DNA of 63,989 nucleotides, the filler included, from Bigelowiella natans CCMP2755 (taxonomy: Eukaryota; Protista; Cercozoa): assembly GCA_000320545.1 (NCBI GenBank). It is 12 parts of 12 records of this genome, joined end to end, with 100 filler letters (N's around TTAATTAATTAA, not from the genome) between each part and the next. Parts side by side here need not be neighbours in the genome. Positions count along the whole stretch, not along the records: positions 28,450 to 46,203 come from ADNK01001620.1; 11 more parts are not named here. One strand, written 5' to 3'. This document shows positions 35,313 to 36,002 of this stretch, in pieces. Every line of letters starts with the position of its first letter. Within the stretch, counting starts at the first letter, position 1. A model generated the notes under the pieces. It did not search any database and was not told the DNA's origin. It was given only the letters and a program-made list of their open reading frames with translations. A program made the position numbers and the translations under genes.

Positions 35313-36002
35313 ATGGGCAACATGTGTTCTTGCATCCCCCAAATAAGGCGCTCCCCTAGTAACAATCATCCTCTGGCGAAAGTTTTCGAGGGTGTTGCTG
35401 TTCTTTGGGATGGTGAGCCTGACGGGCGTGGGAAAGAGGCGGCTGCTGCTCTTCGCGCAGCGATACCCAAACTACCCGTTACCAAACCTCGCGAGCCCGA
35501 CTTTGACGAACATGTAAGAGAAGTCTTGCGGGAGGAAAATAGTGAGCTATCAATGGTGATTCTAGAAGTGTATAAACACATCAACTGGGCTTTCTCTGGT
35601 GCTAGTCTACCCATGCCTAAGGGCGTTGGCGATGCATGTTTGACGGCTGAGCTTCTTGGTCCTGACGGCATGGTAAAGCACCAAACCATCAGAGTCGGGC
35701 TCTTTTTTCAGGAAAAGAATCTAATATACCCAATACGTAAACATGAGGCTGAAGAAGCCTACTGTATGATTGCTGGCACAGCTGAATGGTACTATGAAGG
35801 GACAAAAAATGTTTGGAAGAAAAGGGGTGAGTACCGTCATCACCTCTCAATGATGGGCCATGCAAGTTTTACGAAGGAGAGGTCATTCATTGCAACGTGG
35901 AGATGGTGTGGAAACATAACTGCGGATTCCTACGAGTGCGAGGATCCAGAGGACATAGATAATCTGGAGGAAATAAAAAAACATAGCCAGCCTACCACAT
36001 AG
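35313..36002 (+). CDS. dddQ: DMSP-lyase family cupin (DddQ/DddL-like), intronless, with predicted N-myristoylation/palmitoylation leader
   Basis: 229-aa uninterrupted ORF in gccATGG context. Family motifs ELLGPDG, RVGLFFQ, YPIRKHEAEEAYCMIAGTAEW, HHLSMMGHASFT, FIATWRWCGNITADSY. N-terminus MGNMCSC. The symbol marks family resemblance, not proven orthology or activity. Confidence 0.82.
   Translation: MGNMCSCIPQIRRSPSNNHPLAKVFEGVAVLWDGEPDGRGKEAAAALRAAIPKLPVTKPREPDFDEHVREVLREENSELSMVILEVYKHINWAFSGASLPMPKGVGDACLTAELLGPDGMVKHQTIRVGLFFQEKNLIYPIRKHEAEEAYCMIAGTAEWYYEGTKNVWKKRGEYRHHLSMMGHASFTKERSFIATWRWCGNITADSYECEDPEDIDNLEEIKKHSQPTT

What the first reader, a model, noticed from the sequence alone, without database searches (positions are those of the whole stretch)
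35313..36002. Intact bacterial-type DMSP-lyase-family cupin (DddQ/DddL-like) embedded in a eukaryotic genome
Seen: a clean 229-aa intronless ORF with ELLGPDG, YPIRKHEAEEAY, AGTAEW, GHAS and W-x-W-x-G-x-I motifs. It lies on the same gap-free piece (28450-46203) as spliced host genes and a (GA)n microsatellite, so simple bacterial contamination is unlikely. Knowledge: this motif set defines the DddQ/DddL cupin family of marine alphaproteobacteria. The characterised algal DMSP lyase, Alma1, belongs to the unrelated Asp/Glu racemase superfamily. Inference: a horizontally acquired gene that could give this eukaryote an Alma-independent route from DMSP to DMS plus acrylate. Caveat: the physiological substrate of DddQ-like proteins is debated.
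Basis: partly seen in the sequence, partly recalled or inferred. Interest (0 to 1): 0.9.

Follow-up and report, generated by a model that had tools for sequence, protein, structure and literature searches.

The report
Bacterial-type DMSP-lyase-like cupin in a eukaryote
A marine-bacterial type of metal enzyme gene (the "DMSP lyase-like" cupin family) sits, intact and transcribed, inside ordinary eukaryotic chromosome sequence. It is a real gene transfer, but it belongs to an untested branch of the family that lacks one residue the proven DMSP lyases need.

Summary
ORF 35313-36002 (+) is a clean 229-aa cupin that passes Pfam PF16867 DMSP_lyase (59.5 bits, cut-off 27). Its model folds with high confidence onto DddQ crystal structures.

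It is a eukaryotic gene, not contamination:
- The 17.7-kb piece has no N and about 40 microsatellite arrays.
- A multi-exon sulfatase gene lies on the other strand.
- The gene's GC matches its flanks.
- Two independent JGI contigs are collinear with 35161-36438 and include long untranslated flanks.
- The identical protein is in EukProt.

Every other relative among about 15 billion proteins is 38% identical or less, and every one that carries a name is bacterial, mostly marine Alphaproteobacteria. The gene lies on a very long branch.

The functional reading is only partly supported. The protein falls in an uncharacterised clade in which the first His of the HxHxxxExY motif is Arg (R142). That His is essential in DddQ and DddW. 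The other five active-site residues are kept, including the catalytic Tyr150. Bacterial clade members sit in housekeeping neighbourhoods (PepN - gene - GatB), not DMSP or acrylate clusters.

The eukaryotic copy has gained an N-terminal MGNMCSC motif, a likely myristoyl/palmitoyl anchor. DMSP cleavage is possible but unproven (about 0.25-0.3).

The parts
35313..36002 (+). Intronless coding sequence of the 229-aa cupin-DLL protein (stop included)
   Evidence: ORF list. Pfam PF16867 at 59.5 bits against a cut-off of 27. AF2 model with mean pLDDT 89.8. Foldseek top hits are the DddQ entries 4b29, 5cu1 and 4la2.
35161..36438 (+). Footprint of two independent JGI contigs: L002 covers 35161-36438 and L001 covers 35191-36331. 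Read as the mRNA: 5'UTR of at least 152 nt, CDS, 3'UTR of at least 436 nt, no intron.
   Evidence: Collinear blastn at 99.8% and 99.1%. Differences against L002: CDS 3/687, 3'UTR 8/436.
35313..35333 (+). Codons 1-7, MGNMCSC. Gly2 with Ser6 fits the N-myristoylation pattern, and Cys5/Cys7 are candidate palmitoylation sites. This is a eukaryote-specific N-terminal extension absent from the bacterial homologues.
   Evidence: Sequence. Strong start context GCCATGG. Residues 1-20 have low pLDDT and lie outside the fold. Homologues align from about residue 17-24. The acylation itself is inferred from the PROSITE-type rule, which is my own knowledge.
35727..35762 (+). Cupin motif 1, Y139-P-I-R142-K-H144-E-A-E-E148-A-Y150. 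It is equivalent to DddQ Y120, H123, H125, E129 and Y131, with Arg in place of the first His.
   Evidence: Alignments to DddQ structures. Family column counts. Residue roles from PMC4437653 and preprint 10.1101/161257.
35859..35918 (+). Cupin motif 2: His183 (metal ligand, = DddQ H163) through W196-R-W198-C-G-N-I (W198 = DddQ W178)
   Evidence: Invariant columns H183, W198 and G200. Alignment to 4la2 and 5cu1.
35943..35999 (+). Acidic C-terminal tail (residues 211-229) with no counterpart in the bacterial proteins. It carries the only two amino-acid differences between the two alleles.
   Evidence: Low pLDDT. P0152 compared with the window protein.
34855..34900 (.). (AG)23 microsatellite 413 nt upstream of the start codon. 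An A-rich tract follows at 35029-35055.
   Evidence: Tandem Repeats Finder.
39971..42264 (-). Neighbouring spliced host gene, a sulfatase. Exon-bearing frames are 42082-42264, 40318-40476 and 39971-40144. Further sulfatase-like exons are seen by eye at 42882-43019, 41263-41522 and 38995-39363. The introns are full of microsatellites.
   Evidence: Exon-by-exon Pfam PF00884 hits at E 0.028, 0.17 and 1.8e-4, at collinear profile positions. Motif reading. A GT donor and an AG acceptor flank exon 41263-41522.

Best explanation
This is a genuine nuclear gene of a eukaryote, probably a marine protist. It was acquired by horizontal transfer from a marine bacterium, most likely an alphaproteobacterium, and has since been domesticated.

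Signs of domestication:
- It is intronless.
- Its base composition is fully ameliorated to the host.
- It is transcribed with long UTRs from a strong Kozak start.
- It has gained a short N-terminal Met-Gly...Cys signal, which most likely tethers the protein to a membrane by myristoylation and palmitoylation.

The product is a single-domain, mononuclear-metal cupin of the DMSP-lyase-and-lyase-like family (PF16867, 'cupin-DLL'). It belongs to an uncharacterised RxH clade rather than to DddQ, DddL, DddW, DddK or DddY.

Inferred mechanism: His144, Glu148 and His183 hold a transition-metal ion. A small carboxylate-bearing zwitterion (a sulfonium or quaternary-ammonium betaine) binds the metal through its carboxylate, possibly helped by Arg142. 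Tyr150 abstracts the alpha proton to drive a beta-elimination.

DMSP is a candidate substrate, but more probably a weak or side substrate. The native substrate is unknown.

Shown here: gene, fold, family, clade, eukaryotic setting, transcription footprint. Inferred: lipid anchoring, metal use, chemistry, substrate.
For: Family and fold:
- Pfam PF16867 at 59.5 bits.
- AF2 mean pLDDT 89.8.
- Foldseek top hits are all DddQ (4b29, 5cu1, 4la2), E 1e-15 to 1e-14.
- The profile of the nearest kin hits 5cu1 at 2e-28, but DddK and DddY only at 0.08-0.1.

Eukaryotic residence:
- No N in the piece, and about 40 microsatellite arrays in 17.7 kb.
- A collinear multi-exon sulfatase lies on the minus strand.
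- CDS GC is 48% and GC3 46.5%, against 47.1% for the flanks. Bacterial homologue genes have median GC 58% and GC3 63%.
- The identical protein is held by EukProt.
- Two separate JGI samples carry collinear 1.1-1.3 kb contigs with non-coding flanks.

Bacterial ancestry:
- 572 HMMER hits, and only the protein's own cluster is below E 1e-30. The best others are 31-40% identical.
- Named relatives are Rhodobacteraceae/Paracoccaceae, Amylibacter, Hoeflea, Nitratireductor, Thioglobus and Pelagibacteraceae.
- The nearest Atlas clusters are 100% Bacteria.
- The query falls inside a clade with 99-100 SH-like support that holds all of the Arg-type sequences.

Still functional:
- All family-invariant columns are kept.
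- The CDS has fewer differences between alleles than the 3'UTR: 3/687 against 8/436, Fisher p 0.028. For the cupin core it is 1/570, p 0.013.

Substrate doubt:
- R142 replaces the His that is essential in DddQ and DddW.
- DddQ's own lyase activity is judged promiscuous, and most cupin-DLLs are not DMSP lyases (preprint 10.1101/161257).
- No bacterial neighbourhood carried acrylate or DMSP genes.
Against: - Continuity beyond 35161-36438 therefore rests on the assembly alone.
- That the two JGI samples are poly(A)-selected culture transcriptomes is my recollection of IMG numbering, not a tool result.
- The donor is unresolved. The query is a long branch (1.5-1.9 substitutions per site against a median of 0.24-0.78) with odd composition, and it has no supported sister.
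- Lipid anchoring rests on a seven-residue motif only.
- The catalytic Tyr is kept here, although 45 of 55 Arg-type bacterial relatives have Phe. So the eukaryotic copy may be closer to a true lyase than its kin.
- Arg in place of His could alter or abolish metal binding, which would make the proposed chemistry wrong.
Confidence: 0.62

Rival explanations
1. One reading: it is a bona fide DMSP lyase. It would cleave DMSP (or DMSOP) to DMS plus acrylate at physiologically useful rates and give this eukaryote an Alma-independent DMS route.
For: - It is a PF16867 member with a DddQ-like fold.
- Metal ligands H144, E148 and H183 are kept, as are the catalytic Tyr150, Tyr139 and Trp198.
- The validated DddU lyase is reported to depend on just four residues, His146, Glu150, Tyr152 and His185. 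These have the same spacing as the query's 144/148/150/183 (PMC11497337).
- The query keeps Tyr where most bacterial clade-mates have Phe.
Against: - The first His of HxH is Arg. The equivalent His is listed as essential in DddQ, and H81A abolishes iron binding and activity in DddW.
- DddQ's own activity is very low and probably promiscuous.
- Bacterial clade members are not next to acu, prpE or DMSP-transport genes.
- No sequence link to DddL, DddU or DddW could be shown here.
Confidence: 0.27
2. Bacterial contamination or a chimeric assembly: the ORF belongs to an associated bacterium and was joined to eukaryotic DNA in error.
For: - Intronless, with a bacterial family and no other eukaryotic homologue found.
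- Marine protist cultures commonly carry Roseobacter-group bacteria (my own knowledge).
- No reads could be laid.
Against: - Two further independent assemblies reproduce 152 nt of upstream and 436 nt of downstream non-coding sequence. In bacteria the neighbouring genes lie about 30-110 nt away in the loci read.
- GC and GC3 equal the eukaryotic flanks.
- No bacterial-type ORF or Pfam hit lies beside the gene.
- No sequenced bacterium or metagenome has anything above 40% identity.
- The N-terminal and C-terminal extensions are absent from the bacterial proteins.
- EukProt holds the identical protein.
Confidence: 0.03
3. A transferred gene that is transcribed but no longer has enzymatic function: a decaying relic, or a protein re-used as a non-catalytic ligand-binding or scaffolding protein at a membrane.
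For: - A very long branch and unusual composition.
- Loss of the first His.
- Only one lineage carries it.
Against: - The 229-codon frame is intact in the genome and in two alleles.
- Every invariant family column is kept.
- The fold is predicted with high confidence.
- Fewer allelic differences fall in the CDS than in the 3'UTR.
- Arg at this site is shared by about a third of the bacterial family, so it is a clade character and not decay.
Confidence: 0.08

Closest known systems
DddQ (Ruegeria pomeroyi 5CU1, R. lacuscaerulensis 4LA2/5JSO, Roseovarius nubinhibens 4B29)
   Same: - Same Pfam family and the same helical-N-terminus-plus-cupin-barrel fold. These are the top Foldseek hits, with TM 0.71 by target.
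- Same motif spacing, with Tyr139, His144, Glu148, Tyr150, His183 and Trp198 conserved.
   Different: - Only 19-20% identity in the structural alignments. phmmer E values are 1e-7 to 2e-3.
- Arg142 replaces DddQ His123.
- Eukaryotic host, an N-terminal acylation motif and an acidic C-terminal tail.
- No betaine-catabolism neighbours.
Uncharacterised RxH clade of PF16867 in marine Alphaproteobacteria (Amylibacter, Litoreibacter, Hoeflea, Marimonas and others), usually encoded between pepN and gatB
   Same: Nearest sequence relatives (31-40% identity). Arg at the first-His position, the same length of cupin core, and the same invariant columns.
   Different: - Most bacterial members (45 of 55) have Phe instead of the catalytic Tyr. 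The query keeps Tyr, like the minority RY forms.
- The bacterial proteins are about 198 aa, without the N- and C-terminal extensions.
- The query's branch is 2-6 times longer than the median.
DddU (Amylibacter cionae H-12, Phaeobacter inhibens P66; PMC11497337)
   Same: [quoted passage not shown] Its key residues His146, Glu150, Tyr152 and His185 have the same spacing as 144/148/150/183 here.
   Different: - DddU lies in a DMSP-induced acu-type cluster and is a proven, though slow, lyase.
Alma1 (algal DMSP lyase, Asp/Glu racemase superfamily) and fungal DddP
   Same: Eukaryote-encoded enzymes linked to DMSP cleavage. According to the literature, fungal DddP is also a bacterial family found in eukaryotes.
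   Different: Unrelated folds and chemistry. Alma1 uses an active-site Cys and no metal, and DddP is an M24 metallopeptidase-like enzyme. The query has only the PF16867 cupin domain.

Membership tests
Pfam PF16867 DMSP_lyase / cupin-DLL superfamily | HMM score above the curated gathering cut-off | tested here: met
   59.5 bits against a cut-off of 27, E 4.4e-16, residues 53-190.
Pfam PF16867 DMSP_lyase / cupin-DLL superfamily | Cupin beta-barrel with an N-terminal helical bundle, as in the DddQ structures | tested here: met
   AF2 mean pLDDT 89.8. Foldseek top six hits are all DddQ entries, E 2.7e-15 to 1.4e-13.
Pfam PF16867 DMSP_lyase / cupin-DLL superfamily | Motif 1, HxHxxxExY: first His | tested here: not met
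   Arg142 aligns with DddQ His123 and 5CU1 His139. Arg is shared by 45-55 of about 150-160 relatives.
Pfam PF16867 DMSP_lyase / cupin-DLL superfamily | Motif 1: second His, Glu and Tyr (metal ligands and catalytic base) | tested here: met
   H144, E148 and Y150 align with DddQ H125, E129 and Y131.
Pfam PF16867 DMSP_lyase / cupin-DLL superfamily | Motif 2 His, and the active-site Trp at its end | tested here: met
   H183 and W198 are invariant columns. They align with DddQ H163 and W178.
DddQ sensu stricto | Groups with characterised DddQ proteins in a tree | tested here: inconclusive
Indirectly, identity to the DddQ structures is 19-20%. The query also sits in the Arg-type clade, apart from 100 of the 103 His-type rows (support 92; smallest starred set 100), and apart from a His-type outgroup at 99.
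DddQ sensu stricto | DMSP-dependent DMS and acrylate release | not testable with these tools
   Needs an enzyme assay.
DddL | Sequence clustering with Sulfitobacter or Rhodobacter DddL | not tested
   No DddL sequence or solved structure appeared in any result. NCBIfam gave no family at E <= 1.
DddK / DddW / DddY | Closest profile match to these families | tested here: not met
   The profile of the query's kin hits DddK at E 0.08 and DddY at E 0.1, against 2e-28 for DddQ-type 5cu1.
DddU | More than 70% identity to H-12 DddU (the authors' criterion), and location in an acu-type cluster | not tested
   The sequence was not obtainable. Only the spacing of the four key residues could be compared. 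The eukaryotic gene has no such cluster.
Alma1 (Asp/Glu racemase superfamily) | Asp_Glu_race domain | tested here: not met
   PF16867 is the only Pfam hit at E <= 1.
Bacterium-to-eukaryote horizontal gene transfer | Physical linkage to eukaryotic sequence on one gap-free contig | tested here: met
   No N. About 40 microsatellite arrays. Spliced sulfatase exons. Read-level confirmation was not possible.
Bacterium-to-eukaryote horizontal gene transfer | A lone eukaryotic sequence inside an otherwise bacterial family | tested here: met
   572 hits; every hit that carries a name is bacterial, many have no name or taxon, and the only EukProt record is the protein itself. Only the best 150 hits and 20 clusters were inspected for source.

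The most novel reading that the evidence does not exclude
The protein is an active, membrane-tethered DMSP (or DMSOP) lyase. It would be the first cupin-type DMSP lyase encoded by a eukaryote. In it, Arg142 would replace the first cupin His to grip the substrate carboxylate. It would give this protist an Alma-independent source of DMS and acrylate, placed at a membrane surface.
Probability: 0.25. Interest if true: 0.8.

Novelty: new member of a known kind. Interest (0 to 1): 0.5.

Why it matters
Alma-family enzymes are the only characterised algal DMSP lyases, and eukaryotic DMS production is often attributed from sequence data using Alma alone. A eukaryote-encoded cupin-DLL gene would be missed by such surveys, or be binned as bacterial.

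If the protein cleaves DMSP, it adds a second eukaryotic route to DMS. If it does not, it is still useful. It is a domesticated, lipid-anchored representative of a large clade of marine-bacterial cupins that no one has characterised. That clade has Arg in place of His, and often Phe in place of the catalytic Tyr, yet its members are currently annotated wholesale as 'DMSP lyase family protein'. This warns against counting PF16867 hits as DMSP lyases in ocean gene catalogues.

Single bacterial enzyme genes in protist genomes are common, so the transfer itself is not surprising.

Tried and rejected
- NCBIfam: no family at E <= 1.
- Word-indexed protein search with the single protein found only the protein itself and one 34% hit. 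With a 40-row profile it found 31 hits; all that carry a name are bacterial and many have none.
- Transcript of the neighbouring gene: an exact wobble-tolerant scan of metagenome contigs found nothing. This negative means little, because a scan with the cupin protein itself also failed to return L001 or L002. That collection does not hold those samples.
- Long ORF fragments around the gene gave no Pfam hit at E <= 0.1. Two exon fragments against PDB gave nothing significant, only a sulfatase at E 1.5. Shorter exon-by-exon Pfam then gave the collinear sulfatase hits.
- The search for related loci with the 40-row alignment failed for lack of a conserved stretch. A 9-row bacterial alignment worked.
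- DddU: no sequence could be obtained. tblastn against plasmids gave only weak Sinorhizobium/Ensifer and single Sulfitobacter, Gemmobacter and Phyllobacterium hits.
- Dinoflagellate spliced-leader relic: none within 3 mismatches.
- The 'careful' IQ-TREE run did not finish, so the quick PMSF tree was used.
- Organism name: the tools blank names for the window's own proteins, so I could not identify the species.
- Rejected readings: an Alma-type lyase (wrong fold), and a mitochondrial or endosymbiont-derived ancient gene (no other eukaryote has it).
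Full report
**1. The observation**

The ORF is at exactly 35313..36002 on the + strand. It is 229 codons, starts with ATG and has no internal stop. It is the longest non-repetitive frame in the piece.

These motifs are not chance. When 143 relatives are aligned, they fall on the family's most conserved columns. G116, G129 and H183 are invariant. Y139, H144, A146, E148, G155, W159, W198, G200 and Y207 are nearly so.

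Pfam gives one family, PF16867 DMSP_lyase, at 59.5 bits against a gathering score of 27. NCBIfam gives nothing.

**2. Fold and nearest known proteins**

By sequence, the best solved relatives are DddQ-type DMSP lyases: 5cu1 at E 1.2e-7, then 4b29, 4la2 and 5jso. A profile of the query with its 39 nearest relatives raises this to 2e-28 for 5cu1 and 1e-23 for 4la2 and 5jso. DddK and DddY stay at 0.08-0.1.

AlphaFold2 with that alignment gives mean pLDDT 89.8 and pTM 0.85. The core, residues 21-210, is confident. It consists of four N-terminal helices followed by the cupin barrel. Residues 1-20 and 211-229 have low confidence. The six best Foldseek matches are all DddQ entries, with E 2.7e-15 to 1.4e-13, TM 0.71 by target and 19-20% identity. 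The ESM Atlas's own model finds the same family, in clusters that are 100% bacterial.

**3. Is it really in a eukaryotic genome?**

Yes, as far as an assembly can show.

- The piece 28450-46203 has no N. It carries 48 Tandem Repeats Finder rows, about 40 distinct arrays, of (AT)n, (AC)n, (AG)n and trinucleotide repeats. These include a perfect (AG)23 413 nt upstream of the start codon.
- No bacterial-style gene lies beside the ORF. The flanking frames are short or repeat-driven and give no Pfam hit.
- On the minus strand, between about 43.0 and 39.0 kb, there is a split sulfatase gene. Three separate exons, searched one by one, each have PF00884 Sulfatase as their best family, at profile positions 78-109, 191-224 and 226-247. 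That is the order expected along the minus strand (E 0.028, 0.17 and 1.8e-4).
- Three more exons carry recognisable sulfatase motifs by eye. One of them has clean AG and GT borders.
- Each sulfatase hit is below Pfam's threshold on its own. Three collinear hits to one family out of 24,736 are what carry the argument.
- The cupin CDS has GC 48% and GC3 46.5%, against 47.1% for the rest of the piece. The 72 bacterial homologue genes I extracted have median GC 58% and GC3 63%.
- The start codon is in a strong GCCATGG context.

**4. Independent copies and transcription**

The protein's 90% cluster has three members:
- the identical 229-aa sequence, held by EukProt and MetaClust;
- two 226-aa gene calls from two different JGI samples.

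Their contigs are L001 (1143 nt) and L002 (1280 nt). They are collinear with window 35191-36331 (99.8%) and 35161-36438 (99.1%) without any gap that could be an intron.

Both contigs start within 30 nt of each other. Both stop well short of the next repeat, and they carry 122-152 nt upstream and 329-436 nt downstream of non-coding sequence. That is what mRNA contigs look like. It is not what genomic contigs of a repeat-rich genome look like, nor fragments of a compact bacterial genome. An ATTAAA hexamer lies 10 nt beyond the end of L002.

From the IMG numbering I believe these samples are culture transcriptomes of the MMETSP project. That is my recollection, not a tool result.

L002 is a second allele or strain. 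Its differences from the window are:
- 3 in 687 coding bases (one synonymous, two in the last eight codons);
- 8 in the 436-nt 3'UTR (Fisher p 0.028);
- 1 in 570 for the cupin core alone (p 0.013).

This is a small sample, but it points to constraint on the protein.

Continuity beyond 35161-36438 therefore rests on the assembly.

**5. Where it comes from**

HMMER against 1.84 billion cluster representatives finds 572 relatives. Only the protein's own cluster is below 1e-30. The best others are 31-40% identical at E 1e-25 or weaker.

Every relative that carries a name is bacterial: Pseudomonadota MAGs, Rhodobacteraceae/Paracoccaceae, Amylibacter, Pseudodonghicola, Granulosicoccus and Hyphomicrobiaceae. 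A scan of one genome per bacterial species returned 126 relatives. Nearly all are marine Alphaproteobacteria, such as Amylibacter, Paramylibacter, Litoreibacter, Marimonas, Hoeflea and Nitratireductor. A few are Thioglobus and Pelagibacteraceae. None of the 20 clusters I checked for source is eukaryotic apart from the query's own.

In the trees the query lies inside a clade with 99-100 support. Its sister is unresolved, and its terminal branch is 1.5-1.9 substitutions per site against medians of 0.24-0.78.

The simplest reading is one transfer from a marine alphaproteobacterium into this eukaryotic lineage, followed by fast divergence. The donor cannot be named. I found no paper in the library that reports a eukaryotic member of this family.

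**6. Which part of the family?**

The literature defines the cupin DMSP lyases by HxHxxxExY, a His in motif 2 and an active-site Trp (preprint 10.1101/161257). It lists DddQ Tyr120, His123, His125, Glu129, Tyr131 and His163 as essential. In DddW, replacing the first His (H81A) abolishes iron binding and activity (PMC4437653).

The query maps as follows:

| Query | DddQ equivalent |
|---|---|
| Y139 | Y120 |
| R142 | H123 |
| H144 | H125 |
| E148 | E129 |
| Y150 | Y131 |
| H183 | H163 |
| W198 | W178 |

So one of the defining residues, the first His, is Arg. This is a clade character, not damage. About a third of the relatives have Arg there. All 55 Arg-type rows fall, with the query, in one supported group of 61, apart from 100 of the 103 His-type rows.

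Within that clade, 45 of 55 proteins also have Phe in place of the catalytic Tyr. Nine, the query among them, keep Tyr. Further 'RY' forms occur in Hoeflea, Nitratireductor, Marimonas and Aliisedimentitalea, and as the second gene of a tandem pair in an Amylibacter MAG.

**7. What the bacterial neighbours say**

In seven contexts the clade's gene sits at one conserved chromosomal position: malate synthase G - aminopeptidase N - cupin - (short-chain dehydrogenase) - GatB - BolA - DnaJ. In Hoeflea and Nitratireductor it lies next to panC/panB or a gyrB-like gene.

None of these contexts has acuI, acuK/N or prpE-type genes, or a DMSP transporter. Such genes accompany dddL, dddY, dddD and dddU.

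One member lies between an MTTB-family methyltransferase, a dimethylglycine-dehydrogenase-like gene and two M24 peptidase/creatinase-like genes. This recalls the betaine-catabolism context that led Lei, Alcolombri and Tawfik to call DddQ's lyase activity promiscuous. Those authors conclude that most cupin-DLL proteins are not DMSP lyases.

**8. What the eukaryote added**

The bacterial proteins are about 198 aa and align from about residue 17-24 to 207-212 of the query. The eukaryotic protein has 20 extra N-terminal residues beginning MGNMCSC.

- Gly2 with Ser6 fits the N-myristoylation rule.
- Cys5 and Cys7 are typical neighbouring palmitoylation sites.

This rule is my own knowledge (PROSITE PS00008 type) and was not tested here. 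The protein also has a 19-residue acidic tail. I infer a protein held on the cytosolic face of a membrane.

**9. Most likely mechanism and odds**

I take it to be a working metal-dependent cupin. Its metal is held by His144, Glu148 and His183, and Tyr150 acts as the base for a beta-elimination on a small carboxylate zwitterion. Arg142 possibly pairs with the carboxylate.

- Genuine eukaryotic gene of bacterial origin: about 0.9.
- Active enzyme: about 0.8.
- DMSP as the physiological substrate: about 0.25-0.3.
- Contamination: about 0.03.

**10. Verdict**

The 'DddQ/DddL-type DMSP lyase' label is only a family-level truth. This is a new, eukaryote-encoded and probably lipid-anchored member of a known family, from a branch nobody has assayed.

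Interest is moderate. Isolated bacterial enzyme genes in protists are common, and the function is open. A simple enzyme assay would decide whether eukaryotes have a second kind of DMSP lyase.

Noticed in passing
window 38995-43019, minus strand: A multi-exon sulfatase gene of N-acetylglucosamine-6-sulfatase-like appearance, with at least six exons. Its introns, of 100 to over 1000 nt, are packed with di- and trinucleotide repeats.
   Followed up: partly
window 44986-46203, plus strand: A long Gln/His/Gly-rich open frame of over 400 codons, with GC 54-58%, that runs off the end of the piece. It has no Pfam hit. It may be a low-complexity host gene or an artefact of repeats.
   Followed up: partly
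window 28450-46203: Very high microsatellite density: about 40 arrays in 17.7 kb, mostly (AT)n, (AC)n and (AG)n of 15-35 copies, plus many trinucleotide runs. Very little of the piece is recognisably coding.
   Followed up: partly
L003-L008, L044, L051, L060 (bacterial loci): The Arg-type PF16867 gene occupies a conserved site in Rhodobacterales, malate synthase G - pepN - cupin - gatB - bolA - dnaJ, often with a short-chain dehydrogenase beside it. This suggests a vertically inherited core gene of unknown function that is annotated as 'DMSP lyase family protein'.
   Followed up: partly
L044:4989-6266 (Amylibacter MAG); also the contig of P0002: Tandem pairs of PF16867 genes. In L044 one copy has Arg plus Phe and the other Arg plus Tyr at the first-His and catalytic-Tyr positions. 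This suggests duplication and divergence of function.
   Followed up: partly
contig of P0006 (no DNA held): One clade member lies between an MTTB-family methyltransferase, a dimethylglycine-dehydrogenase-like gene and two M24 (creatinase/DddP-like) genes. This is a quaternary-amine catabolism setting, like the one proposed for DddQ.
   Followed up: no
window 35188-35196: A two-codon upstream ORF (ATG GTG TAG) lies in the 5'UTR. It is covered by L002 but not by L001.
   Followed up: no
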